Below are positions 6,676 through 61,098 of a DNA stretch of 64,000 nt, in pieces. Where the stretch lies: contig CM075977.1 in the NCBI GenBank assembly GCA_038087875.1, positions 351,540,001-351,604,000 on the forward strand, given 5' to 3'. Origin of the DNA: Malacoraja senta (lineage: Eukaryota). The position numbers and the translations under genes are program-made. Below the pieces are notes generated by a model. The model was not told the origin of the DNA, made no database searches, and saw only the letters and a program-made list of their open reading frames with translations. The first letter of the stretch is position 1. The number at the start of each line of letters is the position of its first letter.

Positions 6676-6912
6676 TTGTGTATAAAGGAACTGCAGATGC
6701 TGGTATACACTGAAGATAGACACAATGTCCTGGAGTAACTCAGCAGGTCTGGCAGCATCTCTGGAGAAAAAGAATGGGTGACATTTTGGGTTGGGATGCT
6801 TCTTTAGACCCTTCTTGAGTCTGAAGAAGGGTCCCGTCCTAAAACATAACCCAACCTTTTTCTCCAGAGATGCTGCCTGACCTGAGTTATTCGAGCACTT
6901 TTTTGTCTATCT
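6676..6912. mobile_element. Head-to-head inverted pair of Penelope-derived hammerhead units
   Basis: The left arm (minus unit) and right arm (plus unit, CTGAAGA at 6821) are reverse complements; flanks ACGTGTATCATCTT and ACATGTAGCATCTT look like a degenerate TSD. Confidence 0.7.
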
Positions 6913-13865: not shown

Positions 13866-16784
13866 GATCACAGTGAATGGTGGTGCTGGCCCAAAGGGCT
13901 GAATGGCCTACTCCTGCACCTGTTGTCTATTGAAATCAAATATTTTTGCTATCACCGCATTGTTGTTTTCATGCTCAAATTGGAAGAGTTCAGCAGGTTA
14001 AGCAGTATCAGAGTAGACAGTACTTTTACTGCACAAACAGAACTTGTGACCAGCAGTACAGCAATTCCTAATAAAGAGAGGGTGATTTTTCTAACAAAAT
14101 ACAATGAGTGAAGGAAAGTTATATAAGAAAATTTAGACACAAACAACAGCAAATGTTGGAAGTTGGAACAAAAATAAAAGTGCTGGAGGAACTCAGCAGG
14201 TCGAACAGCATATGTGGAGATAACGGGATGGTTGTCAAATGTACGGCATTGGCGTACTGCAGGGTCTCAAACCCAAATTTCAACTGTGCCTTTGCTTCCA
14301 CTGAAGCAGCTCAATGTGCGGACTTCCTCCAGTAGATGTAAGAAAATGATGGGATGTGGCCAACAAGGGAAATAACCAGACATCTCCATTTTAATGGAGA
14401 ATGAGAATATTGGGAATAATGACAAGCCTTTCCAGCCATCCTAGGACAAAGATGAAAGTAACATCATCCTTTCAAACTGAATGGAAATCCATGCTTAGGT
14501 GCATGGCTGGATAGAAGTTCAGTTTCATTGAATCTCTGTCAGTTGTGAGGGCCGGAGAACCACAAGAAACATACACAAGTATTGCCACAGAAGGCTGTGG
14601 AGGCCAATGGATATTTATAAGGCAGAGATAGATAGATTCTTGATTAGTGCGGGTGTTAGGGGTTATGGGGAGAAGGCAGGAGAATGGGGTTAGGAGGGGG
14701 AGATAGATCAGCCATGATTGAATGGTCATTCAATATAGACTTAATGGGGAGTAGATTTAATGTGCCGAATGGCCTAATTCTGCTCCTATCACAAGAATTT
14801 ATGACCCCAAAACAACAAACTGATTCACAATTTATGTACCTAAACATCTTTATAAGATTATTTCTACACAGAATCTCCCCCATACATTTTTACATATTAT
14901 TCTTTGAATATGACTATAATTTAAATCTTTGATCAGACCATTTTACTTGACTTCCCTTTCCCCATTAGCATTAATAGTAAATAGTCACCCAGCTGCTGTC
15001 ACTGTTCTCAGTATGTATGCAAACGAACAGTATTGTAGTTCGACATTAAATGTTGAATGTAGACAAAGGATCCCATTGCTTTCTTCTCTCCAAGCAGTCA
15101 CTCAATCTGCTTACCCACAAGAAGTTCAATTAATTCAATAGGTCCATGTTAATAGAAAGCTTTGCGATATGAATGTGTGATGTGAAATACTTTGTGTGTT
15201 CCTCATTAATGATCTTTACATAGGCCTCAGAATGCAAGAGAAGTCTCTGAAAATGATTGTTCAAATTTGGGGGGATTCAAATCCTCAAATCACTGAGACA
15301 GCGACAAAAAAAAATGTTGTTAGTGAATGCAATACATGCTTTGATTTTTTAAACAGTGTTTCTAAAATTCTAAGAGAACTTAAAACCCTAACTTGCAATT
15401 TATTTTATATTATTTACTCAGAGTGAGTTTAATACAATAAGTTTGCAGCTCTATTATACTGGAATATTTAGCATTAATTGCATTGAAAAATAATGTTATA
15501 TTCAAAGTTAGTTATTTAAATGCCTAATTTTATAATCTGTACGATGAACCACATCTGTCTAATTACGACCTGATATTTTAAAAGGGAATTGAATTTAGTT
15601 TCTCTATTATACAGAGAACTATAAGCAAATTATGTTAAATTGGAAAATTCTTTAAAAAGATGTAACTTTGGGTGGCAAATGGGTGTGGAACAAGGACATT
15701 GTTGAAATACCATCCTTGTGTTTGAGAGTTTCTTCGTTCCCTCTTTGTTAAAGAATAATATTTGTTCAGTGTACTTGTCCTTAATGAAAAAAAATAGGAG
15801 TGTTTGTTTGACTGATTTATTGGCCAATAATGCAACAGAGCTCAAAGTCTACTTATTGTTGATTTATTACTGAAACAAGCTTAAGATTTAATGCCACAAC
15901 AAACCTTTTTGTTCTAATAAAGCTCAGGGGCATGGTATTTCCCTTCACTTGAAAGTGAGGATTTGCTGCTTACTGTTTCTGTTTCCTGGAGCAAACACCT
16001 CACAAATTGATGGATCTATCCTCTGAGGCATTACTGCTTTTTAAAATATTAATATGTGAGCACATTTAGCAGAGAGTAGCTAGTCTGAAAGTCTCCTGTG
16101 GCTGCTATACAGGACACCAAAGACCTTCCGCCACACAGAGAAAAAGATTTGGTCTAAGTATGGCATTAAGCCGAGCTTTCAGATTTTACAAAATGACCTT
16201 CCTCGCATTTCTGAGGAAACAGCAGTAGCATTTTTCATACAATTTTTCTTCGTTTCAGAATTTGGTTTCTGTTCTGGAAATGAAAGTGATACATGCTGCA
16301 CTGCAGCCTCAGATCTCAGCTAAACACTGATTAGGTAGGACTGGTCGTCACATCTTGTTATAGTGGCGTATAGCCGCAGGATCCCCTCTGTGATTCAGAA
16401 AAAGACTTGCACTGATTCCATGTAGAAACATAAACTTCTGCAGAAGTGCATCGTTTGGCAGTAAATCTTAATCAAGGTCCAGATTATTATCAATATTTTT
16501 TAACGCAAGTGTGGCCAATGTTTCAAATTCCAGTGGAGTCAAACTTTGGAATACATTTCATTTGTTATACCTGCAGAGACATCTGCTGAACACAGCAATA
16601 TTAATGTGTGTTGGAGAATAAAAAGCATCATATTGAAGAATTTAACAATACAGATTGGTCACTAAACACAGATCACCTTCACAATGTCAATCGGAGGGAA
16701 CCTTTTACTTTGGTTAGTCAAAGTTTGAAATTCAAGCTTGTTATTTGATGGCTTGTAAAGGGCTAAGCAGGTAATCACATTTTG

Positions 16785-17495
16785 GATGATAAACACAAAA
16801 TGCTGGAGTATCTCAGCGGCTCAGGCAGCATCTTTGGAGAAAAGGAATAGGCGATGTTTTTGTCGAGACCCTTCTTCAGACTGAGAGTCAGGGGAGAGGG
16901 AAACGAGAGGTATGAAAAGGAACAAAGAACAAATGAATAAAAGGTATGAAAAGAAAAAGCCAACACCGATGATCAAGTAAAGGTTGAACCCACAATGGCC
17001 CATTGTTGGTCGTAGATAAGATGATTATGAAGGGATATGAACAGTGAAACTAAGCAGAACGACAGTGAAACTTGTAGGATGATGGGTGGGGAGGGGCAGA
17101 GAGAGGGAATGCAAGGGTTACGTGAAAATAGAGAACTCAATATTCAAATCACAGGGTTGTAAGCTGCCCAAGCAAAATAAGAGGTACTGTTCCTCCAATT
17201 TGCATTTGGCCTCATTCTGACAACAGAGGAGGCTCAAGAAAGGAAGGTCAGTATGGGAATGGGAAGAGGAGGTAACATCCTCTCTCAGTGCTCCCCCGCT
17301 GTGATTCCTCCTGCTCTCCAGCTCCACACTTTTCATACCTTTCATTCATTTGTACTTTGTTCCTTTTCATACCTCTAGTTTCCCAATTAAAACGTCACCT
17401 ATTCCATTTCTCCAGAGATGCTGCCTAACCTGTTGAGTTACTCCAGCATTTTGAGTCTATCTTTGGCGCAAACCATCATCTGCAGTTCCTTCCTA
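16785..17495. mobile_element. Penelope-like remnant with GIY-YIG C-terminus, pseudo-LTR and inverted tail
   Basis: Minus strand HSHTDLPFLSLLCCQNEAKCKLEEQYLLFCLGSLQPCDLNIEFS (17118-17270); hammerhead-like motif near 16850-16883 (-); plus-strand tail 17390-17495; CACATTTTG at 16776 and 17496. Confidence 0.75.
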
Positions 17496-17718
17496 CACAT
17501 TTTGTCTACTCCACTGCAAAATCTCTTCAAGGTATGCCTACTTTGAAGAAGTCCTCCTCCTCTCTCCAATGGGAGTTCAGCAACATCCTCTCTGCAGTTC
17601 CATCCTACACAAACACATTTAAGTGCGTGCATGCATGTTTGATACGCTGTCTTGGGTTTGTTCAAAAAGAAAATAACTGCATTTATATGTTATACTTTCC
17701 TAATATCAGGATATCTCA

Positions 17719-19176
17719 GACACAAGGAACTACAGATGCTGGTTTACATGCTGGAGTAACTCAGTAGGCCAGGCAACATTTCCGTAGAACATGGATAGGT
17801 GATATTTTGGGTCAGGACCCTACTTCAGAATGATTTTGGTGGTGGGGGTGGAGAAAAGTGGAAGTGAGTTGGAGACAGAACAAAGCCTGGCAAAGTGATA
17901 AATGGGGCGGCAAGGTAGCGCAGCGGTAGAGCTGCTGCCTTACAATGCCAGAGACCCGGGTTCTGACCACGGGGGCTGTCTGTATGGAGTTTATACGTTC
18001 TCCCTGTGACCACGTGGGTTTTCTCCGGGAGTTCCGGTTTTCCCCCCACACTCCAAAGACATGTAGGTTAATTGGCTTCGGTAAAGATTGTAAATTGTCC
18101 CTAGTGTGTGGAATAGTGCTAGTGTACGGGGTGATCGCTGGTCGGTGCAAACTTGATGGGCCGAAGGACCTATTTCTGCACTGTATCTCTAAATTAAACT
18201 AAATGGGTACAGGTCAGGGGACCGGGGTTGATTAACTTACAAACAACTCACCTCCTCGTTCTCTCCCCCCCCCCTCTTTTTCACCCTTCTCTTTCCTATG
18301 CCCCACAAGAATTCTTTCTCCCGTTCCCCATCCAAATGTTCTCTTTCACCTATGTTGCTTCCAGTAGCTTCCCAATTTTCATCGCTTCTATCCAGTAGCT
18401 TCCCAATCTTCATCGCTTCACACTTTTTGTCTTTTCATCTCAGGCCTTTGTTTCACCCTTTGCTTATCAACCCCCCCCCCCCCGCACACACACACACACA
18501 CACACTCTCTCTCTCACCCGTATCCACCTATCACTTGCCAGGCTTTGTCTTGCCCCAACTTCAGTTCCAGCTTTCTCCCCACCACCACAGTCAGTCTGCA
18601 GAAGGGTCACCACCCAAAATGTCATCTTCCTATGTGGTCCACTGATGCCGCCTCACCCGCTGAGTTAGTCCAGCACTTTGTGTCTTGTTTTTCACCAATC
18701 ACTTGCCAGGCTTTGTCCTGCCCTCTCCTCCATTCCAGCCTTCTCTCCCCCCCCCCCCCACCACAATCAGTCTGAAGAAATGTCTCGAGCCGAATAATCA
18801 CCTATTCATGTTCTCCAGAGAAGCTGACTGGCTGACTGTCTTCCAGCACTTTGTATCTTTTTTTTGTTAAACAGCATCCGCAATTCATTGTGTCTCAATA
18901 TCACTTGACAGGCATTAGTCCTGCTCCCACCTCTATTCCAGCTTTCTCCCCCACCAAAACAATTAGGGTACCGACCTGAAACATTGCCTTTCCATATGAT
19001 CCACAGATGCTGCCTCACCTGCTGAATTAGTCCCGCTCTTTGTATCTTTTTCTGCTAACTATCACTTCCCAGGCTTTGGCCTGCCCCCACCTCTCTTTAG
19101 CTTTCTACCCCCAGCACAATCTGAAGAAATGTCCCGACCCAAAACATAACCTATCCAGCACTTTGTGTCTTTTTTT
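17719..19176. mobile_element. Penelope-derived non-coding element: one inverted unit plus four tandem ~160-200-bp hammerhead-bearing units
   Basis: 15-bp TSD TATCAGGATATC(T/C)CA at 17704-17718 and 19177-19191. Units start ATCACTT(G/C)(C/A)CAGGC near 18530, 18698, 18899 and 19061, each with a degenerate CTGAAGA..stem..GAAA motif. Confidence 0.75.
17907..18199 (+). mobile_element. HE1-type SINE inserted in the Penelope-derived element
   Basis: SINE consensus with 8-bp TSD TAAATGGG at 17899-17906 and 18200-18207. Confidence 0.88.
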
Positions 19177-19243
19177 TATCAGGATATCCCACATAATTTA
19201 AGCCCAATGAAGTGTTTTTTACGTTTTTGCTAATGATTGAAAA

Positions 19244-20298
19244 ATTAACGGGTCCCTTTCAGAATGGCAGGCAGTGACTATTGGGGTACCGCAAGGCTTG
19301 GTGCTGGGACCGCAGTTATTTACAATATACATTAAATGAGGGGATTTAGATGAGGGGATTAAAAGTAACATTAGCAAATTTTGAGATGACACAAAGCTGG
19401 GATGCTATGAGGATGTAGGGTGACTTGGACAGGTTGGGTGAGTGGGCAGATGCAAGGCAGATGCCATTTAATGTGGATAAATGTGAGGTTATCCACTTTG
19501 GTGGCAAGAACAGGAAGACAGATTATTATCTGAATGGTGTCAAGATAGGAAAAGGGGAAATACAATGAGATCTGGGGGTCCTTGTTCATCAGTCACTGAA
19601 AGTAAGCATGCACGTACAGCAGGCAGTGAACAAAGCTAATGGCATGTTGGCCTTCATAACAAGATGCGTTGAGTATAGGAGCAGAGGTCCTTCTGCAGTT
19701 GAACAGGGCCCTGGTAATACCACACCTGGAGTAATGTGTGCAGTTTTGGTCTCCAAAATATGAGGAAAGCCATTCTTCCTATTGAGGGAGTACAGCGTAG
19801 GTTCACGAGTTTAATTCTCGGGATGGCTGGACCATCATATGTTGAAAGAATGGAGCGACTGGGCTTGTATACTCTGGAATTTAGAAGGATGAGAGGGACT
19901 CTTATTGAAACATATAAGATTATTAAGGGATTGGACACGCTAGAGGCAGGAAACATGGCCCCGATGTTGGGGGAGTGCAGAACCAGGTGCCACAGTTTAA
20001 GAATAAGGGGTATGCCATTTAGAACGGAGATGAGGAAAAACTTTTTCACCCAGAGAGTTGTGAATCTGTGGAATTCTCTGCCTCAGAAGGCAGTGGTGGC
20101 CGATTCTCTGGATGCTTTCAAGAGAGAGTTAGATAGAGCTGTTAAAGATAGCGGAGTCGGGGGATATGGGGAGAAAGGAGGAATTGGGTACTGATTGTGG
20201 GTGATCAGCCATGATCACAGTGAATGTGGTGCTGGCTCGAAGGGCCAAATGGCCATCTCTTGCACCTATTGTCTATTGCTTATTGTCTATTGTCTATT
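19244..20298 (+). mobile_element. 5'-truncated CR1 LINE
   Basis: GVPQGLVLGPQLFTIY through VVNLWNSLPQK, with a (TATTGTC)n tail. Confidence 0.9.
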
Positions 20299-22517
20299 AG
20301 AAATTGTTTATACCGTGACTTATTTATCTTCTCTACAGTGTAGAAACCCATACAGAGCTGAGGTAAATCTTACCACATTTTTAATCAAATTATCCCCCGT
20401 GGCAAATGTGCCATTGATTTATTTCTTCTGGGTGTAACAAAAAGTGACATTCAAGCCTGCGTTACATGGTGGGAGCTTTGTTCCTGTTGTTCCACATAGG
20501 AAGTAAATTATGAGGATGAGCAGCTTGGCACACTCCTGTGATACTGAAGTGATTTATGGAAATAAAATGCAACTAAGGTTCACTGAAACAATTTAAATAA
20601 AATAGCACTGCAATTTTGCTGAAATTAAAATGAATTTACAAGATTTGAATAAGGCAACTTTGAAGACAGGCCCCCATTAAAATTTAAAAATAAACTGATC
20701 ATTCGACATAAAGAAAAACTGTTTTCGCAATGAAATACAGGATCTTCATTAAGATGAGTAGGCTGGAGTAATTTTGAATGTTAGCCACACTGAGTAGGAT
20801 TACCACAATTGAAAGGAGCTCGCGAAGAAGTTACACCAGAGCTTTGTGTCTTTTTTTATTGAAAGAAGCTTGTAGTTTACATTCTAATGCCATTTACCAT
20901 GGGTATTCTGTGAAAATAGATGCATATTGAATGGCACTGCTGGCTCAAAGGGCCGAATGGCCTACTGCTGCACCTATTTTCTATGTTTCATATTTCATAT
21001 TTCTCCCACTGTTCCCTGGCAAAAGAGAACGATCTTATGAACATGAGAATGATGTTCTCTATCACTTCACTCTACTGACTCTATACTATCACTCTACTGA
21101 AGCACTTCAATATCACAGGGGTGATATACTCATAATTTACAGGAGAGGGTGGTGCTCTGTGGAATTCATTGCTACAGATGGCTGTGGAGGTCAAGTCAAT
21201 GGATATTTTTAGGGTAGAGATTGACATATTTTTGATTAGTACATGTGTCTGGGGTTATGGGGAGGAGAATTGAGTTGAGAATGAAAGATAGATCAGCCGT
21301 GATTGTATGGCGGAGTAGACTTGAAGGGCAGAATGGCCTAATTCTGCTCCTATAACTTATGAACTTATGAACTGCCTGCATCTCTCTCCTTTGTGTGCAA
21401 CACTGTTACAATACAAATTTCTCCAATTGTTGACAGAAAAAATTCATAGCCACAATTACGAATTCATAACCAGTGCAATCAGGTCCTTGCTGCTTTAGCT
21501 TTGCAATTGTGGCTGTTTCAGGTGGCAGGTTTAAATTGTCTAACTGGAACGTAGATGTCCCATTCACTGTTGCTCAGGGAGGGGGAGGCAGGGAATAACA
21601 AAGGGGAACCTGGCACAGGGGGGAGGAGGGGGGGGGGGGGAATTTGTAACTTTGTAAGTGCCATTTATGGGCGACTATTTGCTAAGAATTTCACTGTGAC
21701 TTGTCATCTTCTCATCTCTCCTCATCCTTCTTTGCTCATTTTCCCAGTATAACGGGTTGGTAAGGAGAATGGCAACTAGTTTGTGCAGGTGCCTTAAAGT
21801 CAGGACAAAGTGGAACATCACCTGACATAGCACTCTTTGTAGCTTTAACCACCAAACACTTGTGCAATTCACTAAATATTCACAATATGACTGATGATTC
21901 CCATAACTAACACTGTTCCTTCCTTACGCGCTTTTAGGTGTCTAAAGTTAAGAGATGACATTAGCTGGAATACTGAAATCCAAAATAACATTGTAGGACA
22001 CTGGGGAGTGTTGTAGAGAAGAAGGATCATACACAGTTCAATGAAAGTGGTATCACAGGTAGATAGGGTGGTAACGAAGGTTGTTGGTATATTGGCCTTT
22101 TACAGTCAGGGTATTGAGTATAGAATGTTATTCAAATTGCTGACCCGAAACATTACCTATTCCTTTTCTCCAGAGATGCTTTCTGACCCACTGAGTTACT
22201 CCAGCTTTTTGTGTCTATTGAGTATAGAAGTTGGGACATTATGTTACAGTTGGACAAGACGTTGGTGAGGCTCCATTTGTAATATTCTGTTTGGTTTTAG
22301 TCACACTGTCATAGGTAGAAAGGCATTAAGATGGATTTCTGGATTGCGCGTAGATTTTCGACAATGTTGTCAGAACACGAGGGCCTGAGAAATAGGGAGA
22401 TAGTGGGTAGGCTAGGATTTTTTTCCAAGGAGCATAGGAGGGTAAAACATGATCTTATAGAGGTGTACAAAATCATGCGGCAAATTAACAGAGTTAATGC
22501 ATTGAGTCGTTACTCAG

Positions 22518-24475: not shown

Positions 24476-25545
24476 CTAGATCAAGTGCAGACCTGTTGGG
24501 TCTGCTCCCCCAACGAATGATTCCACCACTCACCCGTTCCCCCAATGCAACCTGTTCCCCCAACGCAATATTGCACCACTCACGCATAGCCCCCAACTGC
24601 ACAGGTGCGGCTCATTTCTCCTCATCCCCAGCACTCCCTCCTCCTCCTCTTCACCCTCCCTCTTCAATCCCTAGAGAGGGAGGGGGATAGAGAGGGAGGG
24701 GTGGTAGAGAGGGAGGGGTGGTAGAGAGGGAGCGGGGTAGAGAGGGAGCGGGGTAGAGAGGGAGCGGGGTAGAGAGGGAGGGGGAAGAGAGGGATGGGGG
24801 GCAGAGAGGGAGGGGGAAGAGAGGGATGGGGGGCAGAGAGGGAGGGGGAAGAGAGGGATGGGGGGCAGAGAGGGAGGGGGAGAGGGAGGGGAGGGGAGTA
24901 GAGAGGTAGTGTAGAGGGAGGGAGGGAGAGGGGCAGAGAGGGAGGGGGTAGAGAGTGAGAGGGAGGGGGTAGAGGGAGAGGGAGGGGTGTATAGTGGGGG
25001 GACATGGCAACCTCCCTCCGTAACCCCTCCTCTCTCCTTCCTCCTCATCTCCTTCATCCTCCTGCCCTCACTCCCATTCCCTGCTCCAGGACCTACCCAG
25101 GTCGTAGAACAGCGCCAGGGCCTGGAATTCGGCCTGGTTCCCTTACTCGGACCGGCCCTGGCTGCAGACTCCAGCCCTCAGCTCAGCCGCCGCCTGGGTT
25201 CCAATCCAAGCCCCAACTTCATTTCCGGGCTCGTCCCTGACCCTGAACCCAGGCTCGTCCTTGGTCCCAGCGGTGGCTTCTTTTGCGGCCTCCGTAACAG
25301 CCCCATCCCAAGCCCCGGGCTCGGCCCTCACTCCAGCTCCAGCACCAGACCCCGGGCTCGGCCAGCGGCACCACCGTCCCTGTCGGGCGTCGGGCGCCAT
25401 CAGCCACCGCCACTCCTTGTTCACCGCGAGCGCTGGAGTGCCCCTCCCTCCCGGAGTGTCCCGTCCTGCCTTTCGAGTGCATTGTGACGTCACTTGGATT
25501 TTTTTTCCCAAAGTGGGAAGGTTATCTTTGGTGACTCTCATAAGT
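24476..25545 (-). mobile_element. Putative non-autonomous Helitron (3' end defined, 5' end uncertain)
   Basis: Minus strand ends GCAGACC-CAACA-GGTCTGC hairpin, 7 nt, CTAG, then T at 24475; interior is a polypurine minisatellite and a CpG-rich block. Confidence 0.55.
24672..25000. repeat. Polypurine G/A minisatellite (~16- and ~32-bp units)
   Basis: Repeats such as TAGAGAGGGAGCGGGG and CAGAGAGGGAGGGGGAAGAGAGGGATGGGGGG. Confidence 0.9.
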
Positions 25546-30996: not shown

Positions 30997-33654
30997 TATC
31001 CGTAGCAATTGGAAAATCTGTAAAGAGAAATTTTCCACCAAAAACACGACCTCATAATAAGTTTGAAACTTACCTGCAGGGTTTTAAACTTACCGCTGGA
31101 GGAGTGACACTCCTCCCAGCCAGTCGTGTGCCATGCGTTAGACGTATTGACGCGCATGCAGGATGGCGGGCTTCTTCACGTAGTCACTCACGTGACTTCG
31201 AAGTAAAATACAGATCAGATCAGTGTGTCCATATACAATAGAATATATATATATATATACACACATAAATAGACAGATAGAGTGCAATAGGCAGTTATAG
31301 TTTAGAGTTTGTTTGAAGTTGTGTTTAATAGCCTGATGGCTGTGGGGAAGTAGCTGTTCCTGAACCTGGGTGTTGCAGATATCAGGCTCCTGTACCTTCT
31401 ACCTGATGGCAGCGGAGAGGTGAGTGTGTGGCCAGGATGGTGTGGGTCCTTGATGATGTCGACAGCCTTTGTGAGGCAGCGACTGCGATAGATCCCCTCA
31501 TTGGTAGGGAGGTCAGAGCCGATGATGGACTGGGCAGTGTTTACAACTTTTTGCAGCCTTTTCCGCTCCTAGACGCTCAGGTTCCCGTACCAAGCCACGA
31601 TGCAACCAGTCAGCATGCTCCCCACTGTACACCTGTAGAAGTTCGAGAGAGCTCTCCTTGACATACCGACTCTCTGTAATCTTCTCAGGAAAAAGAGGCG
31701 CTGATGTGCTCTCTTTATGATTGGGACCAGGAGAGATCTTCGGAAATATGCACGCCAGGAATTTGAAGTTCTGGACCCTCTCCACCATCGACCCGTTGAT
31801 ATAAACGGGACTGTGGGTCCCCATCCTACCCCTTCCGAAGTCCATAATCAGTTCCTTGGTTTTGCTGGTGTTGAGAGCCAGGTTATTGTGCTGGCACCAT
31901 TTGGTCAATCGATCGATCTCACTTCTATACTCTGACTCGTCCCCATCAGTGATATGTCGCACAACAGTGGTGTCGTCAGCGAACTTGATGATGGAGTTCG
32001 CACTATGTCTGGCTATGCAGTCATGAGTATAGAGTGAGTACAGCAGGGGGCTGAGCACGCAGCCTTGAGGTGCTCCCGTGCTGATTGTTATCGAGGATGA
32101 CACATTTCCACCAATACGGACAGACTGTGGTCTGTGGATGAGGAAGTCGAGGATCCAATTGCAGAGGGATGTGCAGAGACCCAGATCTGAGAGCTTGGTA
32201 ACCAGCTTGGAGGGGATGATGGTATTAAATGCCGAGCTGTAGTCAATGAATAACAGCCTGACATATGAGTTTTTGTTGTCCAAGTGGTCCAGAGCGGAGT
32301 GGAGGGCCAGCGAGATCACATCCACCGTTGATCTGTTGTGGCGGTAAGCGAACTGCAGTGGGTCCAGGTTTTTGTCGAGGTAGGAGTTGATTTGCGCCAT
32401 GATCAGCCTCTCAAAGTACTTCATCACCACAGATGTTAGTGCCACAGACCTCAGAAGTGAGAGGTTGAAAATGTCCGTAAAAACTCCAGCCAGTTGGTCC
32501 GCACAGGTTTTTAGAACACGCCAGGGTATACCATCAGGTCCAGGCGCTTTCCGAGGGTTCACCCCTCTGAAGGATCTTCTGACGTCGGCCTCTGTGACCA
32601 TGATCAAAATACCATCACGGCGAATGTGGGCTCAGGAGGGCACATCAGTGTTCTCCCTATCAAAGCGTGCGTAAAACGCATTGAGCTCATCAGGGAGTGA
32701 TGCTTCGCTGACATTTGAGCTGCCTCCTGATTTTGCCTAGGAGGAGGTGATTGCATTCAAGCCCTGCCACAGTTGCCAAACATCCGTCTCATCCTCCAGT
32801 TTGGAGCAGAAGTGCCTTTTGGCCTTTTTGATGGCCTTACCAAGGTCGTATCTGGACTTCTTGTAGACCTCTGCATCGCCAGACCTGAATGCCCGGGATC
32901 TGGCTTCAGAAGAATGCGGATCTCATGGTTCATCCAAGGCTTCTGGTTAGGAAACACTCGGAAGGATTTTGTTGGGATGCAGTCCTCCACACATTTCTTT
33001 ATGAAGTCTGTAGCGACTGTGACGTATTCATTCAGGTCCGTTGCCAAGTCCCTGAACATTGCCCAGTCTGCAGACTCCATACAGTCTTGGAGTTGTTCCT
33101 CTCTCCCCCCACCCCCCTCCCCCAACCAGCTCTGTACTGTCCTCACCTATGGGGATGCGCTCTTCAATTGCTGCCTGCAGGCAGGAAGAAGCAATCAGTA
33201 TGGTCGGATTTTCCGAAGTGAGGGCGAGGGATAGCGCGATAGGCATCTTTGATGGTCGTGTAGCAGTGGTCGAGGGCACAGAGAATGCATCACTTCACAC
33301 TTGTCTGCATTAAATTCCAGCTGCAATTCCTTTGCCCATTGATTCAGGCGATCTCGCAGTCCATTCGTAACCTTAGACAACCTTCACTGTCCACTAGACC
33401 TATGTGGTATCATCCACAAATGTACTAATCGTGTCACCCACATTTTCATCCAACTTGTTAACGTATGACAAACTTCAGAGGACCCAGCACTAATCACTGT
33501 GGCATACCATAGTTCACAGGCCTCCAATCTGAAAAAGAACCATTCACTAACACGTCCTTCCACCAAGCCAATTTTATATCCATTCATCTAACTCACTATG
33601 GATCCCACATCTTCTCACGTTCCAGAGCAGTTTACCATGCAGGACCTTGTCACT

Positions 33655-41101: not shown

Positions 41102-41313
41102 TGACACAAAGTGCTGGAGTAAGTCAGTGGGTCAGACAGCATCTCTGGAGAAAAAGGATGGCTGATGTTTCAGGTCGAGACTCTTTTTCAGTCTGAAGAA
41201 GGGTTCTGACCTGAAACGTTACCCATCCTTTTTTCTCCAGAGGTGCTGCCTGACGCGATGACTTATTCCAGCACTTTGTGCCTATCTCAGATATAAACCA
41301 GTATCTGCAGTTA
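41102..41313. mobile_element. Inverted pair of Penelope-derived hammerhead units inside an old CR1 (about 41000-41850)
   Basis: GA(T/G)GTTGGGAT flanks at 41091-41101 and 41314-41324; plus-strand core CTGAAGA (41193) to GAAACGTT. Confidence 0.75.
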
Positions 41314-43420: not shown

Positions 43421-43454
43421 GGTCTGAAGAAGGGTCTCGACCCGAAACGTAACC
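43421..43454 (+). ncRNA. Minimal type I hammerhead ribozyme motif (intact core)
   Basis: GGT-CTGAAGA-A-GGGT CTCG ACCC-GAAA-C-GTA^ACC: CUGANGA, stem II, GAAA, palindromic ACGU stem III and NUH site. Confidence 0.7.
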
Positions 43455-45330: not shown

Positions 45331-48300
45331 ATTGAGAGCAGGAACAGGGAGATACGGGACCTGAATGTGTGGCTGAGGAACGGGGGCTGGGATTTAGACT
45401 CTTAGATCACTGGGATCTGTTTTGGAGTAAGGGGGAACTGTACAAAAGGGACGGATTGCATCTTAACTGGTGGGGGACCAGCATTCTGGCAGGCAGGTTT
45501 GCCACTGCTACACGGGTGGTTTTAAACTGAATAAGGGGGGTGGGGTGTCAAATGGGATAGTCGAGGATGGAGTTAAAGGGAAAGAGAGTAAAGGGATGTT
45601 TAATGACCCCAGAATTAACAGGAAAGGAAGCTCACACAGGGATAGGAGAGTATGGCCAAGTGAAATAGGGATCGATGTGAAAGGTGAGATGCATAAGGAA
45701 TTAAAAGTATTGTATATGAATGCGCAAAGCATAAGAAGTAAAGTAGATGAGCTTGAGGCTCAGTTAGAGGTTGGTAGATATGACATTGTGGGGATTACTG
45801 AGACGTGGCTGCAGGAGTATCGGGCCTGAGAACTTAATATTCAGGGTTATACATCCTATAGAAAGGACAGGCAGGTGGGCAGAGGAGGGGGGGGGTAGCT
45901 CTGCTGGTGAGGGATGGAATTCAGTCCCTTGCGAGGGAAGACATAGGGACTGACGAGGTAGAGTCACTGTGGATTAAGTTGAGGAATTGTAAAGGCAAGA
46001 AGACACTAATTGGTGTTATTTACAGACCCCCAAATAGTAGTCCGGATGTAGGGTGTAAGTTGCAGCAGGAGTTAAAACTGGCATGTAACAAAGGTAATGC
46101 CACTGTGGTGATGGGGGATTTCAATATGCAGGTAGACTGGGAAAATCAGGTTGGTTCAGGACCCCAAGAAAGAGAGTTTGTAGAATGCTTCCGAGATGGA
46201 TTCTTAGAGCAGCTTGTAAAGGAGCCGACCAGAGAAAAGGCAATTCTAGATTTAGTGTTGTCCAATGAACCAGATATGATAAGAAAACTCAAGGTGAAGG
46301 AACCGCTTGGAGGTAGTGATCATAATATGATTAGTTTTAATCTGCAATTTGAGAAGGAGAACGTTAAATCAGAAGTGGCAGTGATGCGGTTCAACAAAGG
46401 GGACTATGAAGGCATGAGAGGGAAGCTGGCCAAAGTAGACTGGAAAGGGAATCTAGCAGGAATGACGGTGGAACAGCAATGGCAGAAATTTCTGGGCATA
46501 ATCCGGGAGACGCAGGATCATTTAATTCCAAAAAGGATGAAAGATTCTAAGGGGAGTAGGAGGCAACCGTGGCTGAGAAGAGAAGTTAGGGATAGAATAA
46601 AACTAAAAGAAAAGATGTATAACACAGCAAAGAGTAGCCGGAAGCCAGAGGACTGGGAAACTTTCATAGGACAACAGAAGGAAACAAAACGGGCAATACG
46701 GGCTGAAAAGATGAAGTACGAGTGGAAGCTGGCCAGGAATATAAAGAAGGACAGTAAAAGCTTCTTTAGATATGTTAAGGGAAAAAGAGTAGCAAAGTCA
46801 AATGTGGGTCCCTTGAAGGCAGACACGGGTGAAATCATTATGGGCAACAAGGAAATGGCAGAAGCGTTGAATAGGTACTTCGGATCTGTCTTCACTAAGG
46901 AAGACACAAACAATCTCCCAGATGTACTGGAGGACAGAGGATCTAAGGGGGTAGAGGAACTGAAAGAAATTTTCATTAGGCGAGAAATAGTATTGGGTAG
47001 GCTAATGGGACTGAAGGATGATAAATCCCCTGGGCCTGATGGTCTGCATCCCAGGGTCCTCAGGGAGGTGGCTCTAGAAATAGTGGACGCATTGGTGATC
47101 ATTTTCCAATGTTCAATAGATTCAGGATCAGTTCCTGTGGATTGTACGATAGCTAATGTTATCCCACTTTTCAAGAAAGGAGCGAGAGATAAAACAGGGA
47201 ATTACAGACCAGTTAATTCGGTGGTGGGAAAGATGTTGGAGTCAATTATTAAAGAGGTAATAATGGGGCATTTGGATAGCAGTAAAAGGATTAGTCCAAG
47301 TCAACATGGATTTATGAAAGGGAAATCATGCTTAACTAATCTTCTGGAATTTTTTGAGGATGTGACAAGTAAAATGGATGAAGGGGTGCCAGTGGCTGTA
47401 GTGTATCTAGACTTTCAGAAAGCCTTTGATAAGGTCCCGCACAGGAGTCTGGTGACTAAAATTAGAGCACATGGTATTGGGGGTAGGGTGTTGACATGGA
47501 TAGAAAATTGGTTGGCAGACCGGAAGCAAAGAGTGAACGGGTCCTTTTCAGAATGGCAGGCAGTGGCGAGTGGAGTGCCGCAAGGCTCAGTGTTGGGGCC
47601 GCAACTGTTTACCATATATATTAATGATTTGGAAGAGGGAATTAGGAGCAACACTAGCAAGTTTGCGGATGACACAAAGCTGGGTGGCAGTGTGAACAGT
47701 GAAGAGGATGTTAGGAGGTTGCAGGGTGACCTGGACAGGTTGAGTGAGTGGGCAGATTCATGGCAGATGCAGTATAATATAGATAAATGTGAGCTTATCC
47801 ACTTTGGCGGCAAAAACAAGGGGGCAGATTATTATCTCAATGGGGTTAGGTTAGGTAAGGGGAAGGTACAGCGAGTCCTGGGTGTCCTTGTACACCGGTC
47901 ACTGAAAGTTGGCTTACAGGTACAGCAGGCAGTGAAGAAAGCTAATGGAATGTTGGCCTTCATAACAAGAGGATTTCAGTATAGGAGTAAAGAGGTTCTT
48001 CTGCAGTTGTATAGGGCTCTGGTGAGACCACATCTGGAGTATTGTATACAGTTTTGGTCTCCTAATTTGAGGAAGTACATCCTTGTGATTGAGGCAGTGC
48101 AGCGTAGGTTCACGAGATTGATCCCTGGGATGGCGGGACTGTTATATGAGGAAAGATTGAAAAGACTAGGCTTGTATTTCACTGGAGTTTAGAAGGATGA
48201 GGAGGGATCTTATAGAAACGTATAAAATTATAAAAGGACTGGACAAGCTAGATGCAGGAAAAAAATTCCCAATGTTGGGCGAGTCCAGAACCAGGGGCCA

Positions 48301-51144: not shown

Positions 51145-51370
51145 AAAATGTCTAGAAAGGAACTGCAGACGTTGGTTTATACCAAAGATAGACACAAGTT
51201 GCTGGAGTAACTCAGTGGGTCAGTCGGCATCTCTGGAGAAAAAGGATGGAAGATGTTCCCTCCCTTCTATTTTCAGTCTGAAGAAGGGGTCCAACCCGAA
51301 AAGTCACCCATCCTTTTTCTCCAGAGAAGCTGCTGACTCGTTGATTTACGCCAGCACTTTGTGTCTATCT
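51145..51370. mobile_element. Inverted pair of Penelope-derived units
   Basis: Minus tail followed by plus CAGTCTGAAGAAGGGGTCCAACCCGAAAAGTCACCC. Confidence 0.7.
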
Positions 51371-52832: not shown

Positions 52833-52995
52833 TTCTTCTTCTTATCGAGTCCACACACAAGATTAGAAGTTGTTCTGCCAGAGCTGAACACACTTCTCGG
52901 CATCTGCATACAATGGTGTCTGTCGCGCTTCCTGCGCATGGTGGTGGAAAGATTGGTGGAAACAGGGCCGCGATGTGAACGCTCTTTCCTTGACC
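52833..52995 (-). mobile_element. Short non-LTR insertion with (AAG)n tail, possibly Vingi/Ingi-like
   Basis: Perfect 14-bp TSD CCATATTATTTATC (52819-52832, 52996-53009); minus strand ends ..AEKCVQLWQNNF* then GGACTCGATAAGAAGAAGAA. Confidence 0.6.
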
Positions 52996-53789
52996 CCATA
53001 TTATTTATCATTTGTTGCTTTATAATCTATATCAAAAATTAAATGTTTGTAAAAGTTAGCTACTCCCCAAAAATAAACGCAAAGATCTAATTCTATAATT
53101 TGAAAATATAGTTATCTATTTACTTTCTGTTGGGAAGTACTTCCTGCTGAACTGTTTGCTTTGAGGACAAATCACAGAACTGTGTGTAAAGTTCAGTAAG
53201 CCCCGAATGGACTCCTATTTTTCCCTTGTGTTTAAAATGAATGACTAGAAAATAATTTTCCACATGTTTCTGACTGTGTGAAAGACTCATTAAAGGTTGA
53301 AATCCTCAAAAATTATAGATGGATTAGGATCCCAACACCTCCACTACCTGATTCACAGCTCCCTTTTGATGTTCAGGTTTAGACGGAATATTGCAGGCAG
53401 TGAGGCACAGTAATAATTGTTTACCGAGACAAAGAACCAGTATGCCTTCCTGCGGTTTAATTTTTTCTCCCACCATTCCTTTTCAAAGAAACTGGGTGTG
53501 ACAAGTGATAAAGCAGTGGTCTGCACTTCATCATTTTAGAGCTGTATGGCATATGCTTTTGCCTTTCAAATTCCCTGGGAGTTTATAATTGATTATAACA
53601 CCGTGCTTAACACCTCTTGAAGGCAATAAATATGTTATTCTTTAAGTCACACGTTCCACTTAATTTCTTTATCATTTTTGAGTATTACTATTTTGCTGTT
53701 TGAATGCTTAGACTTTCCAACACTTGTAGGTTTTGCGAAAATTTGTAGAATTTGCAGATCCTAAAACAATTGATTTAAAAAAGATGAAA

Positions 53790-55040: not shown

Positions 55041-56392
55041 GTCCATATATAGAAATACAATTGGGATATATCACTTTCTTCATTTGCCGTACTAAGCAAT
55101 TTACTAAGAGATTGTTACATGGGACCCCCTTTGCCTCAAGGCAGTAGGGCCCTTGTTTGTGGTCTGGTGGCCTATCAACAAAATAATAAAAATGTTACAA
55201 AATCATTTCAGCTTATCATTTCAGCTTATCATTTCAGCTTTCTGATTATAAAAGTTATGGAATGATGCTGGTAACTTTAGGTCAGGTGAGACAATTAATG
55301 GCCACCTATGTGTAGGAAAGAACTGCAGATTCTGGTTTAAATCGAAGGTAGACACAAAATGCTGGAGTAACTCAGTGGGTCAGGCAGCATCTCTGGATGC
55401 TGGATTAATGGCCACCTAGTTCCTCTGAAAGTCTATCAGATTTGATGTGTTTCTGAATCAGATGCCAAGAGGTAGGTGGTATGTAGACTAATGGATGTGC
55501 ACATGCAGCCTATGTCACTTAACACGAGATTTAATTTTGGAACAACTATACAAGTTAACTATAATTTATGGAAATGGTGTCTGAAATTATCAAGAGTCAA
55601 GTGTTTTTTAATTGTCATATGCACCGGGACTGGTAGACAGTCAGAACCGTTTTCCCAGGGTGGAAATGTCAAAGACTAGAGCTTTAAAGTGAGAGGAGCA
55701 AAGTGTGAATGAGATGTACAAGGCAAGTTTTTACAAGACAGCAGTGGGTGCCTGGGATGTGCTGCCAGGGGTGATGGTGGACACAGATATGATAGTGAAA
55801 TTTAAGAGGCTTTTGGAAAGGCATGTGGATATCCAAGGAATTGGGGAATATGGATCCGGTCCAGGTAGAGAAGATTAGTTTAAATTGTCGTCATGTTCAG
55901 CACGGACATTGTGGGCTGAAGACCCTGTTTTGCACTGTCTATAGAACATGAAATTCTCCCTTGCTGCAGCTTTACACACAGACTAACGCAACAAGACAAC
56001 AGATAAATATACAATAATACAATAAATTATCAGTTATTTTTGATAACCAGACCACAGTTGAAGTATGTAGTGCAATCTTATACTAAATCCATAGTAGTTT
56101 GGTACTGAGATATAGGATAGTTCATGGGACATGACATTTAGGAATTTGCACTAAACGCTGTAATTTCAGTAATCCTCAGCTCCTAAAAAAGGAGAAAATA
56201 TTTAAAATCTGTCAGGCATGGCGATATAAAGAAAAAATATGTCAAAATTAAAGTAAAAGTTAATAATTAAGTGATAAACATGGGACTAGTGACAGCCACA
56301 AATTGCTATATCATGGGAAGGGAAACTAATAACCAAAGGATTAGGAAGGTCCAATTAACCACACATGGATCAAAATTGGGAAACACCCTCCG

Positions 56393-56426
56393 AGTCTGAA
56401 GAAGGGTCTCGACCCGAAACGTCACC
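56393..56426 (+). ncRNA. Minimal type I hammerhead ribozyme motif (intact core)
   Basis: AGT-CTGAAGA-A-GGGT CTCG ACCC-GAAA-C-GTC^ACC. Confidence 0.7.
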
Positions 56427-56739
56427 TAGTCCATTTCTTCAGAGTTGCTGTCTGACCCGCTGAGTTACTCCAGCTTTTTGTGTCTAGCCTCTGGCAAGAC
56501 CCTGCAATAAGTGTCTCCTATGAATCTCCTGTGGTTGAAAGGGAGGAGAATGGATTAGAAAAATATATTCACCTTGACCATATCACAATTATATTTAAAG
56601 AAAGATCTGAAACAATATGCAGCGATGTTCAAAGATTCATACATTCGCATGCATCAAGGTCTATAAATTTCACTTATTAAATAAAGCAACAAACCAATCT
56701 AAATCAAGGTCAGCACTGTAAATTCAAGCAGAGTAAGAG

Positions 56740-57080: not shown

Positions 57081-57673
57081 CTTACAGGTGGTGAAAATGC
57101 AGGATTGCTGCATTAGGTTGTCTGACCCCTGACCTGATCTTGTAACTGCAGCGTTTGTTATGGTTAGTCCAGTTGAGTGTTACTAGTAAGTCCCAAAAGT
57201 GGACCTGCAAGATGGTGGCAGCAGTGGACGGAAGAAAAGAACAGTGCCGGCGAGCAGGCTCAGGAATTACATCCTGGACACTGGAGGTTCTCTGGCTGCT
57301 CCGAGGTTGGCTGCAGGAGACATCCTGGGGCATGGTGGCCACATGAGGCGGGCAACGGCGCATTCGTGGGTGGATGTGTCTGGGTTGAGGTGTCGGATTG
57401 ATGCCCGTTCCCCTTCAGTCTCTGTCTCAGCCGAAGTGTGTTCTGATGCTATGTGGCTGCCTAGTACAGCCTCTCTTTAAGGGCTGTCTCTTTTTTGTTG
57501 AAAGCTGCATAAAATCAGAGAAATCTGCATCAGGAATCAAGTGTGTTCAGTTTTTGTGCCGGTTTCTGAATGTTAATCACCTATCACATTTTCAAACTGG
57601 CATTTGGCTCACTTCATAATCTCCACCATCAATAATTATATATTATTCAAAATTGCATCCCCAACAAATCACT

Positions 57674-57707
57674 AGTCTGAAGAAGGGTCCCGACCCGAAA
57701 TGTCACC
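57674..57707 (+). ncRNA. Hammerhead-like motif in a Penelope-derived unit (one CpG-type change in stem III)
   Basis: AGT-CTGAAGA-A-GGGT CCCG ACCC-GAAA-T-GTC^ACC. Confidence 0.6.
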
Positions 57708-58359
57708 CATCCTTTTCCTCCAGAGATGCTGCCTGACCCGCTGAGTTATTCCAGCACTTTGTGTCTATCTTTGATACAAACCCGAATCTGCAGTTCTTTG
57801 TTTCTAGAACAATATTGAGCCCATGTTTTCATATTTTAATGGCGATCAGGAAACTCAGCCCAAACATTCTTGTGAAATTTTCATGGGTCTTAATATCATT
57901 TTCTCAGAATAAAGCTCCAAAAATAATTTCAATCAATGACAAGATAGGGTACAGGAAGGAGATGAGAGCTTAGTAACGGTGTCAATGTCAGCAAGACAAT
58001 TGAGCTAGTTATGGACATCAGGAAATGAGGCAGTTTACACACCACAGACAGCATCAAATGTACTGAAGTGGAAATGCCCAAACATTTCGGTGAAATTTTA
58101 ACTTGTCTTAATATAATTTTCTTAGAATAAAGCTCACAAAATAATTCCCCCCCACTGTGAACCGCTCCAAACTTTATTTCCACTATGATTTCAACTGCCA
58201 CTGTCCAGGAAAACAATGTCTCTTCTGTTATGCATGGAATTATCTGCTTTACTATCCCCATTTCATCTGAAACTACACTATTTAATGGGCCAACATGCAA
58301 GTTACCATCCTGAGATCAGAGACTTCCTGTGATGTCATATCCAATCGGACTCAGACTTA

Positions 58360-60890: not shown

Positions 60891-61098
60891 TAGGAAGGAA
60901 CTGCAGATGCTGGTTTACACTGAAGATAGACACAAAATGCTGGATTATCTCAGCGGGTCAGTTAGCATCTCTGGAGAAAAGGTTAGGTAATGTTTCGGAT
61001 CGAGACCCTACCTCAACCTGAGTTTCCACCCGAAACGTCACCTACTCCTTTTCTCCAGAGATGCTGCCTGACCTGCTGGGTTACTCAAGCATTTTGTC
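60891..61098. mobile_element. Inverted pair of Penelope-derived units
   Basis: Arms are reverse complements; ATCA(G/A)AGTG flanks; plus arm retains CCCGAAACGTCACC. Confidence 0.7.

What the first reader, a model, noticed from the sequence alone, without database searches (positions are those of the whole stretch)
17704..19191. TSD-bounded tandem array of hammerhead-ribozyme units: candidate retrozyme-like element in a cartilaginous fish
Seen: a 15-bp TSD (one mismatch) brackets a non-coding insert made of one inverted unit (later split by a SINE) and four head-to-tail ~160-200-bp units. Each unit carries a degenerate hammerhead motif (near 18594, 18770, 18965 and 19120). Established: Penelope-like pseudo-LTRs carry minimal type I hammerheads, and metazoan non-LTR retrozymes are tandem short hammerhead repeats processed to monomer and circular RNAs. 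Inference: the array moved as one unit, mobilised by a Penelope RT/EN and possibly copied from a multimeric or circular template. The copies here are decayed and probably no longer cleave.
Basis: partly seen in the sequence, partly recalled or inferred. Interest (0 to 1): 0.8.

Follow-up and report, generated by a model that had tools for sequence, protein, structure and literature searches.

The report
Decayed Penelope-type hammerhead repeat insertion
This is an old, dead insertion of a very common short mobile element that carries a minimal hammerhead ribozyme and was copied in by Penelope-type machinery as an inverted copy plus four tandem copies; it is a clear example of a kind already described, not a new kind.

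Summary
A 15-bp target-site duplication (17704-17718 and 19177-19191, one mismatch) brackets a non-coding insert.

The units belong to a highly repeated family, with about 25 copies in this window. The family consensus carries a Penelope-type minimal hammerhead: CUGAAGA, one bulged A, a 4-bp helix II, GAAA, and a palindromic ACGU before the cleavage site. All five cores in the array are broken, largely at CpG sites.

The insert and family carry the insertion marks described for Penelope-like elements (PLEs):
- two alternative 3' ends about 35 nt apart (the "tail");
- head-to-head inverted arms inside one duplication;
- duplications of 12-15 bp.

An internal tail at the U2/U3 joint and a tail-less terminal end indicate that at least three units were already joined at insertion. 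The irregular joints, alternating unit types and the spacer argue against rolling-circle copying of a monomer circle. No circular RNA evidence could be obtained.

Minimal hammerheads in PLEs (2014), metazoan non-LTR retrozymes (2020) and their PLE origin, including in one chondrichthyan (2026 preprint), are published. The scan has flagged this family many times on other DNA of this genome. Interest is low to moderate.

The parts
17704..17718 (.). Left copy of the 15-bp target-site duplication
17719..17748 (-). The roughly 30-nt 'tail' (long 3' end) of the inverted unit. It abuts the left duplication.
   Evidence: 80% match to the U2 tail; aligned to the family tail
17749..17906 (-). Inverted unit INV: core with a broken hammerhead (17802-17829) and the head.
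   Evidence: nhmmer E 6e-47; core changes A9>U and G12>A
17907..18199 (+). Later SINE insertion that splits INV. Its own 8-bp duplication lies at 17899-17906 and 18200-18207.
   Evidence: very high contig depth in four runs; ARAGORN finds no tRNA
18208..18217 (-). Continuation of the INV arm upstream of its head. By eye it may run to about 18245.
   Evidence: BLAST alignment of 17749..18217 to U1 18675..18513; weak ATCAACCCC match to the spacer end
18218..18513 (.). Spacer X: CT-rich, with a 31-bp x1.9 repeat, poly-C, (CA)n and (CT)n. It has no detectable relation to the units. Part of it is near single-copy.
   Evidence: depth about 75 at 18266-18352, against 1e4 to 1e7 over the units
18514..18692 (+). 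U1 (type a): head, broken hammerhead at 18596 (A6>C, G12>A), short 3' end, no tail.
18693..18896 (+). U2 (type b): head, broken hammerhead at 18772 (helix II and A15.1 changed), short-end motif, then a 31-nt tail at 18866-18896.
18897..19054 (+). U3 (type a): head; hammerhead has lost the CUGANGA box; short 3' end, no tail.
19055..19176 (+). U4 (type b): head, broken hammerhead at 19121 (G10.1 and G10.2 > A and T, G12>A), an internal deletion of about 41 bp, and a short 3' end plus T run that abuts the right duplication.
19177..19191 (.). Right copy of the target-site duplication (one mismatch)

Best explanation
The stretch is one ancient, complex insertion of a short non-coding retroelement derived from the 3' terminus of a Penelope-like element (PLE).

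The family unit has three parts. A head of about 85 nt comes first. A minimal hammerhead follows, and then about 66 nt up to a 'short' 3' end. An optional tail of about 35 nt extends this to a 'long' 3' end.

Inferred mechanism: a PLE RT/GIY-YIG enzyme encoded elsewhere nicked both DNA strands about 15 bp apart. Each 3'-OH then primed reverse transcription at one of two internal start sites on the element RNA. One cDNA became the inverted, 5'-truncated left arm, which has a tail. The other became the right arm, which starts at the short site and runs back through four units and a spacer. Joining the two arms left a head-to-head structure inside a 15-bp duplication.

The right-arm template was already a heterogeneous multimer, or was built by template jumps that re-started at either start site. 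A SINE later landed in the left arm, and all five ribozyme cores decayed.

Shown: the anatomy, family membership, the two end types, the duplication and the decay. Inferred: the enzyme, dual-strand priming, and how the multimer arose.
For: Duplication and unit boundaries.

Family abundance: about 25 copies in the window. Contig depth over the cores is orders of magnitude above the depth over the near-unique spacer.

Family hammerhead:
- The window consensus and the genome-wide loose-end consensus upstream of 17390 both read ..AGTCTGAAGAAGGGTCTCGACCCG, in three organisms' runs.
- Two fully intact cores lie at 43424-43451 and 56396-56423, against 0 in 200 shuffles.
- The core shows the features listed for PLE minimal hammerheads in PMC4209133: a nucleotide between A9 and G10.1, the G10.1-C11.1 pair, and palindromic positions 15.2-16.2.

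Two 3' end classes about 35 nt apart: roughly 11 short and 12 long in the window by my reading of the alignments. This matches the PLE 'tail' at one end of an insertion (PMC8557442). It also matches the two RT start sites, and the cleavage and extension of both strands, reported in PMC11167929.

Inverted pairs:
- Four other head-to-head pairs each have one long and one short arm.
- Two of them have detectable 11-14-bp duplications around the pair.
- Opposite-strand joints at the hammerhead recur in the contigs of three organisms.

Solo copies have 12-14-bp duplications.

Multimer at insertion:
- U2 carries an internal tail, while the array ends at the short site directly against the duplication. 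Simple duplication of a terminal unit cannot produce this.
- No copy of the duplication lies at the internal joints.
- All five units share subfamily markers, and U2/U4 and U1/U3 share derived characters.
Against: - No PLE RT or GIY-YIG ORF lies in the insert or the window. Only LINE-type RTs were found, so the mobilising enzyme is inferred.
- Spacer X is unexplained.
- INV is preceded by sequence that resembles the spacer end, not an a-type unit. The two arms were therefore not copied from one identical template.
- The a/b alternation rests on only about 6-7 characters, with 2-3 conflicting.
- Two of the four inverted pairs show no significant duplication.
- Helix I of the hammerhead is only about 2 bp. 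The minimum-free-energy fold does not give the hammerhead, and no Rfam hammerhead model matches.
- The units differ by 19-30%, while the duplication differs at 1 of 15 positions. This fits units that had already diverged at insertion, but it is not decisive (about P = 0.08 by my own binomial estimate).
Confidence: 0.7

Rival explanations
1. True retrozyme cycle. A multimeric transcript was cut by the hammerheads and ligated into a small circle. Rolling-circle reverse transcription of that circle gave the tandem array, which was then inserted.
For: The units are tandem, non-coding, each carry a hammerhead motif, and sit inside a long duplication, as described for metazoan non-LTR retrozymes (PMC7229834). 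The 2014 paper proposes circles to explain more-than-unit PLE copies. A dimeric a-b circle would fit the a-b-tail-a-b pattern.
Against: - Only one of the three joints has the tail.
- An unrelated spacer of about 290 bp lies inside the insert.
- The array ends lie at RT start sites 66 and about 100 nt downstream of the cleavage site, not at the cleavage site.
- The ribozyme is the minimal PLE type, which has poor self-cleavage in vitro. Cleavage was not needed for PLE insertion in vitro.
- No RNA data could be obtained beyond contigs.
Confidence: 0.1
2. A monomer or dimer inserted first, and the array grew later at this locus by unequal crossing-over or replication slippage. This is the local amplification model for retrozyme arrays.
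For: This model is proposed for vertebrate non-LTR retrozymes by Li et al. 2026. The U1-U2 block aligns to the U3-U4 block at 71% over 282 bp. The outer duplication would be kept.
Against: The b-tail-a joint together with a tail-less terminal b requires at least three units in the original insert, unless the terminal tail was deleted exactly at the duplication boundary. Every joint falls at a natural element end (short or long 3' end joined to the head start), not at arbitrary breakpoints.
Confidence: 0.12
3. Several independent insertions piled up, either by homing of new copies next to the tail of an older copy or by nested hits.
For: PLE endonuclease is reported to recognise its own tail region and to nick within its own terminal repeat. 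The family is dense enough for nested hits, at about 20 events per 64 kb.
Against: No internal duplications flank any unit, and no copy of the outer 15-mer lies inside the insert. All five units share subfamily markers that most other window copies lack. Both outer ends are 3' ends that abut the single duplication.
Confidence: 0.06

Closest known systems
Terminal repeat (pLTR) and 'tail' region of endonuclease-positive Penelope-like elements with minimal hammerheads, for example Poseidon/Neptune of fishes and PAc of Anolis (PMC4209133, PMC8557442, PMC11167929)
   Same: - Minimal hammerhead with a bulged nucleotide after A9, the G10.1-C11.1 pair, and a palindromic helix III stub.
- Two 3' ends 30-40 nt apart, downstream of the ribozyme.
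- An inverted, 5'-truncated copy next to direct partial tandems.
- Heavy 5' truncation.
- A duplication longer than 10 bp.
   Different: The unit has no RT/EN ORF and is only about 180-235 bp, so it is non-autonomous. No autonomous partner was examined here. Helix I is about 2 bp.
Metazoan non-LTR retrozymes (PMC7229834; Li et al. 2026 preprint, DOI 10.64898/2026.07.22.740005)
   Same: Short, non-coding, head-to-tail units that each carry a type I-like hammerhead, with a long duplication. They are proposed to depend on PLEs. They have been reported in one chondrichthyan genome, with mean consensus length 363 bp; the U1+U2 block here is about 380 bp.
   Different: The 2020 definition uses canonical type I hammerheads with loop-loop contacts and shows circular RNAs. 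Here the motif is the minimal type, all copies are inactive, the joints are irregular, an inverted arm and a spacer are present, and no RNA evidence exists.
Hammerhead-bearing satellite or SINE-like repeats, such as newt satellite 2 and Schistosoma Sm-alpha (cited in PMC4209133; otherwise from my own knowledge)
   Same: High-copy short repeats whose hammerheads have a weak helix III and are thought to act in dimeric form.
   Different: Those repeats have canonical helices I and II, and form long homogeneous arrays or SINE-like solo copies. They lack the two-end tail signature and head-to-head pairs.
L1 twin priming inversions (my own knowledge)
   Same: One retrotransposition event gives an inverted 5' part and a direct 3' part inside one duplication.
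   Different: In twin priming the two arms are different, non-overlapping parts of one RNA. Here both arms contain the same 3' region, so two 3'-end-initiated cDNAs were made.

Membership tests
PLE-type minimal hammerhead (Cervera and de la Pena 2014) | Catalytic boxes CUGANGA, GAAA and U-H at the cleavage site | tested here: met
   Met for the family: window consensus, genome-wide loose-end consensus, two fully intact cores against 0 in 200 shuffles, and 5 of 18 copies keep all 11 invariant positions. Not met in any of the five array units.
PLE-type minimal hammerhead (Cervera and de la Pena 2014) | An unpaired nucleotide between A9 and G10.1, the G10.1-C11.1 pair, and palindromic positions 15.2-16.2 with no helix III loop | tested here: met
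   The consensus reads CUGAAGA-A-GGGU/CUCG/ACCC-GAAA-CG-UC. Helix II pairs are kept in 14-17 of 18 copies, with no compensatory changes seen.
PLE-type minimal hammerhead (Cervera and de la Pena 2014) | Helix I of 4-5 bp | tested here: not met
   Only U2.1-A1.1 and G2.2-C1.2 pair in the consensus (reading). The minimum-free-energy monomer and dimer folds do not give the hammerhead. A 2-bp helix I is reported for the D. virilis variant.
PLE-type minimal hammerhead (Cervera and de la Pena 2014) | Self-cleavage (dimeric or protein-assisted) | not testable with these tools
   Needs in vitro transcription or raw RNA read ends. Only contigs were available.
Canonical type I hammerhead (Rfam hammerhead models) | Match to a curated hammerhead covariance model | tested here: not met
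   No hammerhead hit at E up to 10 in 16000-21000, in the whole window, or in 111 nt around an intact core.
Endonuclease-positive Penelope-like element insertion | ORF with a telomerase-like RT and a GIY-YIG endonuclease | tested here: not met
   The insert has only low-complexity ORFs. The ten window ORFs scanned against Pfam, out of 26 of at least 130 aa, gave APE+RT and RT matches only. One of these is a FADD-type LINE RT. The insert is therefore at most a non-autonomous derivative.
Endonuclease-positive Penelope-like element insertion | A 30-40-bp tail present at only one end of the insertion unit | tested here: met
   The tail is at the INV end (17719-17748) and is absent at the U4 end. 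The same long/short asymmetry is seen in four other inverted pairs.
Endonuclease-positive Penelope-like element insertion | An inverted 5'-truncated copy adjacent to direct partial tandems, inside one duplication | tested here: met
   recurrent opposite-strand joints in three runs
Metazoan non-LTR retrozyme | Head-to-tail non-coding units of about 150-450 bp, each with a type I hammerhead | tested here: inconclusive
   Four direct units of 121-205 bp with hammerhead remnants are present. TRF does not call the array, and the motif is the minimal type, not the canonical one.
Metazoan non-LTR retrozyme | [quoted passage not shown] 2026) | tested here: not met
   0 of 5 cores are intact.
Metazoan non-LTR retrozyme | Expression as monomeric circular RNA | not testable with these tools
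   No run on record as RNA holds the stretch. All runs are kept as contigs, which show no ends or circles.
Metazoan non-LTR retrozyme | Low GC content (below about 45-50%) | tested here: inconclusive
   Units are 48.8% GC and INV is 46.3%, against 42.6% for the window.

The most novel reading that the evidence does not exclude
The array is a fossil of multimer transposition. This Penelope-dependent family could move as a pre-formed heterogeneous a-b multimer. Alternatively, it built multimers during reverse transcription by re-starting at either of two start sites. On this reading, the tail-less and tailed joints are an in vivo footprint of the two-start-site mechanism so far seen only in vitro. 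They would also show a direct route from Penelope termini to retrozyme or satellite arrays in a vertebrate.
Probability: 0.3. Interest if true: 0.45.

Novelty: new member of a known kind. Interest (0 to 1): 0.25.

Why it matters
The locus is a readable example of Penelope-type insertion architecture. It shows dual inverted arms, two 3' end classes and head-to-tail joints at natural ends, in a genome where the family is extremely abundant.

A genome-wide study of such joints could test how PLE-derived tandem hammerhead arrays arise: by multimer templates, by template jumps, or by circles. It could also link recent in vitro findings on PLE reverse transcription to natural insertions.

This single locus adds little. 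Its ribozymes are dead, and the class is already described.

Tried and rejected
- Rfam scans gave no hammerhead match, even on intact family cores. The models do not see this minimal variant, so the negative result says only that the motif is not canonical.
- TRF does not detect the array.
- The spacer X looked by eye like further decayed units. Neither nhmmer (E of 1 or more even when the spacer was searched alone) nor BLAST supports that, so I dropped the idea. Only a short ATCAACCCC match links the spacer end to the sequence upstream of INV.
- Minimum-free-energy and dimer folds of an intact core do not give the hammerhead.
- ARAGORN finds no tRNA in the SINE head, so 'tRNA-derived' rests on reading alone.
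- The search for a Penelope ORF in the window found LINE RTs only.
- RNA evidence: neither run search listed a holder on record as RNA, and all runs are contigs. The single read-laying run therefore gave family consensus, joints and depth, but no molecule ends or circles.
- A regex census of near-intact cores under-reported copies and was replaced by anchored alignments.
- Duplications for two inverted pairs and several solo copies were not significant.
- A LINE-mobilised SINE reading was rejected. There is no A-rich or microsatellite 3' end, and both arms repeat the same 3' region.

Full report
**Observation.** The sequence is as described. The 15-mer at 17704-17718 recurs once in the window, at 19177-19191, with one mismatch. 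The whole window would give 0.28 matches by chance at up to two mismatches. In a flank test, the 12-nt perfect core scored above all 300 random flank pairs. The two copies abut the last bases of family homology on each side.

A profile built from the units finds five copies in the insert:
- INV on the minus strand (17718-17905);
- U1 (18509-18692);
- U2 (18690-18865, plus a tail to 18896);
- U3 (18889-19054);
- U4 (19054-19176).

Their E-values range from 2e-28 to 7e-54. INV is split by a 293-bp SINE that has its own perfect 8-bp duplication. The insert has no real ORF.

It contains a 31-bp x1.9 repeat and microsatellites. It has no relative in the window and no significant match to the unit profile, even when searched alone.

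A 472-nt contig of a public run matches 18800-19271 without a difference. It may come from the assembled sample, so it is not independent support.

**The family.** The 3' two-thirds of each unit belongs to a repeat with about 25 copies in the 64 kb. In public runs, contig depth over these cores is orders of magnitude above depth over the near-unique spacer. Depth over the unit heads is intermediate, so the head-bearing subfamily is also multi-copy. One complete unit with both head and tail lies at 57572-57810. Two truncated copies with the subfamily's tail variant lie near 2103-2154 and 14177-14226. The array is therefore not a sequence unique to this locus.

Exact 31-mers of two family copies are held by runs labelled as at least eight organisms.

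**The ribozyme motif.** The window consensus reads CAGU-CUGAAGA-A-GGGU(CUCG)ACCC-GAAA-CG-UC. The same core appears as the consensus of thousands of contig ends upstream of the truncated copy at 17390, in three organisms.

The motif has the features that Cervera and de la Pena list as emergent for Penelope minimal hammerheads (PMC4209133):
- a nucleotide between A9 and G10.1;
- the G10.1-C11.1 pair;
- palindromic positions 15.2-16.2 with no helix III loop, implying action as a dimer.

A strict descriptor finds two intact cores, at 43424-43451 and 56396-56423, against none in 200 shuffles. Five of 18 copies keep all eleven invariant positions.

Several weak points remain:
- Helix I is only about 2 bp.
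- Helix II shows no compensatory changes.
- Minimum-energy folds do not give the hammerhead.
- No Rfam hammerhead model scores at E up to 10, even on 111 nt around an intact core.

It is therefore a minimal, PLE-type motif by sequence, not a canonical type I hammerhead. Activity is untested.

In the array all five cores are broken:
- INV: A9>U and G12>A.
- U1: A6>C and G12>A.
- U2: helix II and A15.1 changed.
- U3: the CUGANGA box is lost.
- U4: G10.1 and G10.2 changed, and G12>A.

Across the 18 window copies, CpG columns carry twice the substitutions of other columns (0.31 against 0.16 per site). G12>A, at a CpG, is seen in 8 of 18 copies.

**Insertion signatures.** Family copies end at one of two places. 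The 'short' end lies within a few bases after TTTGTGTCT. The 'long' end lies about 35 nt further on, at ..CAGTTCCTTCCTACACAT. By my reading of the alignments there are about eleven short and twelve long ends in the window.

This matches the 30-40-bp 'tail' found at only one end of PLE insertion units (PMC8557442). In vitro, that tail corresponds to two adjacent internal start sites of PLE reverse transcription located downstream of the hammerhead (PMC11167929).

Four other loci in the window are head-to-head inverted pairs: 6685-6901, 41103-41283, 51175-51366 and 60895-61097. Each has one long and one short arm. Two of them have weakly significant 11-14-bp duplications around the pair. Opposite-strand joints at the hammerhead recur in the contigs of three organisms.

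Solo copies have duplications of 14, 14 and 12 bp.

Both arms of a pair contain the same 3' region. This differs from L1 twin priming. It fits the report that the PLE protein cleaves and extends both DNA strands.

The array has the same plan. Its left arm is inverted, 5'-truncated and tailed. Its right arm is direct and ends at the short site. One 15-bp duplication encloses both.

**Was it a multimer when it inserted?** Three lines of evidence bear on this.

The joints fall at natural ends. U1>U2 and U3>U4 join a short end to the head start. U2>U3 joins a long end (tail at 18866-18896) to the head start. The array itself ends at a short site directly against the duplication. An internal tail together with a tail-less terminus cannot arise by duplicating the terminal unit. 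So at least U2-tail-U3-U4 were joined at insertion, unless a terminal tail was later deleted exactly at the boundary.

No copy of the 15-mer and no other direct repeat lies at the internal joints. This speaks against serial homing.

Shared derived characters group U2 with U4 (3, including GG>AT in helix II) and U1 with U3 (3-4). INV leans to U2 and U4 (2 each), and the conflicting groupings have 1 each. Pairwise identities are 70-81%, while the duplication differs at 1 of 15 positions. By my own binomial estimate, P is about 0.08 if the units had been identical at insertion. Together these suggest units that had already diverged, in an a-b-a-b order. That would mean a heterogeneous multimeric template, or several RNAs joined by template jumps that re-started at either start site. 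The evidence for this is modest.

**Against a circular template.** A monomer circle copied by rolling-circle synthesis would give uniform joints and identical units, with no spacer. The array boundaries lie 66 and about 100 nt downstream of the cleavage site, not at it. A dimeric circle is not excluded for the a-b-tail-a-b part, but it does not explain the spacer or the sequence upstream of INV. That sequence resembles the spacer end rather than an a-type unit.

No RNA evidence could be obtained. No holder is on record as RNA, and all runs are contigs.

**Comparison with what is known.**
- Minimal hammerheads in PLE terminal repeats, often dispersed as single motifs or as nearby pairs on opposite strands, were described in 2014, including in fishes, coelacanth and Xenopus.
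- Metazoan non-LTR retrozymes were defined in 2020. They are short tandem units with canonical type I hammerheads, with larger duplications when present, and they are expressed as circular RNAs.
[quoted passage not shown] It used both canonical and minimal descriptors and found them in its one chondrichthyan genome.
- Non-autonomous PLE derivatives that form multicopy head-to-tail insertions are also noted for Chlamys elements.

The present insert works like these. It qualifies as a decayed, non-autonomous PLE-type insertion. It fails the strict retrozyme criteria: no canonical hammerhead, fewer than two intact motifs, and no circular RNA shown.

No PLE ORF lies in the window, so the partner enzyme is inferred from the signatures.

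The scan's first readers have flagged this family dozens of times on other DNA of the same genome. One note describes a Penelope RT/GIY-YIG ORF followed by a ribozyme core. Those notes are unchecked leads.

**Verdict.** The feature is real and was read correctly in its essentials. It is a new member of a known kind. The internal-tail joint and the dual-arm architecture are good teaching examples and could seed a genome-wide test of how PLE-derived arrays form. This locus by itself is ordinary and inactive. Interest is 0.25.

Noticed in passing
window 52946-53009 (-): Sub-threshold match to the CPEB3 (HDV-like) ribozyme model: 30.3 bits against a gathering score of 35, E 4.7e-4. It could be an HDV-like ribozyme of a retroelement 5' end.
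   Followed up: no
window 43424-43451 (+) and 56396-56423 (+): These are the only two fully intact minimal hammerhead cores in the window, against 0 in 200 shuffles. Both lie in 5'-truncated solo copies that begin a few bases upstream of CUGA.
   Followed up: partly
window 6685-6901, 41103-41283, 51175-51366, 60895-61097: Four head-to-head inverted pairs of the same family. Each has one long-tailed and one short-ended arm. Duplications around the pair are detectable for the first two.
   Followed up: partly
window 57572-57810 (+): A solo copy with head, hammerhead (all invariant positions kept), core and long tail. It is the only other copy in the window with the array's head. No clear duplication was found.
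   Followed up: partly
window 55294-55417 and 22112-22229: Two 5'-truncated solo copies with perfect 14-bp target-site duplications. In the second, about 15 nt of unrelated sequence lies between the duplication and the start of homology.
   Followed up: partly
window 17907-18199 (+): A SINE with box A/B-like head motifs by eye and a TAAAC-type 3' end. It has very high contig depth. Parts of the 1.7-kb query (12-16% of its sampled 31-mers, roughly the SINE's share of its length) are held by runs labelled as about nine other organisms. ARAGORN sees no tRNA.
   Followed up: partly
window 19250-19600 (+), 31513-32607 (-), 45907-48192 (+): LINE remnants: an RT fragment directly right of the array, a 364-aa FADD-type RT ORF, and a 761-aa ORF with APE endonuclease and RT domains.
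   Followed up: partly
window 24620-25100: A GA/CT-rich, partly palindromic low-complexity region that draws dozens of spurious miRNA model matches.
   Followed up: no
family consensus, e.g. window 56396-56445: AGAAGG, which spans A9 and the 5' strand of helix II, can pair with CCUUUU about 30 nt downstream. The predicted minimum-energy fold uses this pairing instead of the hammerhead. It may be an alternative, inactive conformer.
   Followed up: no
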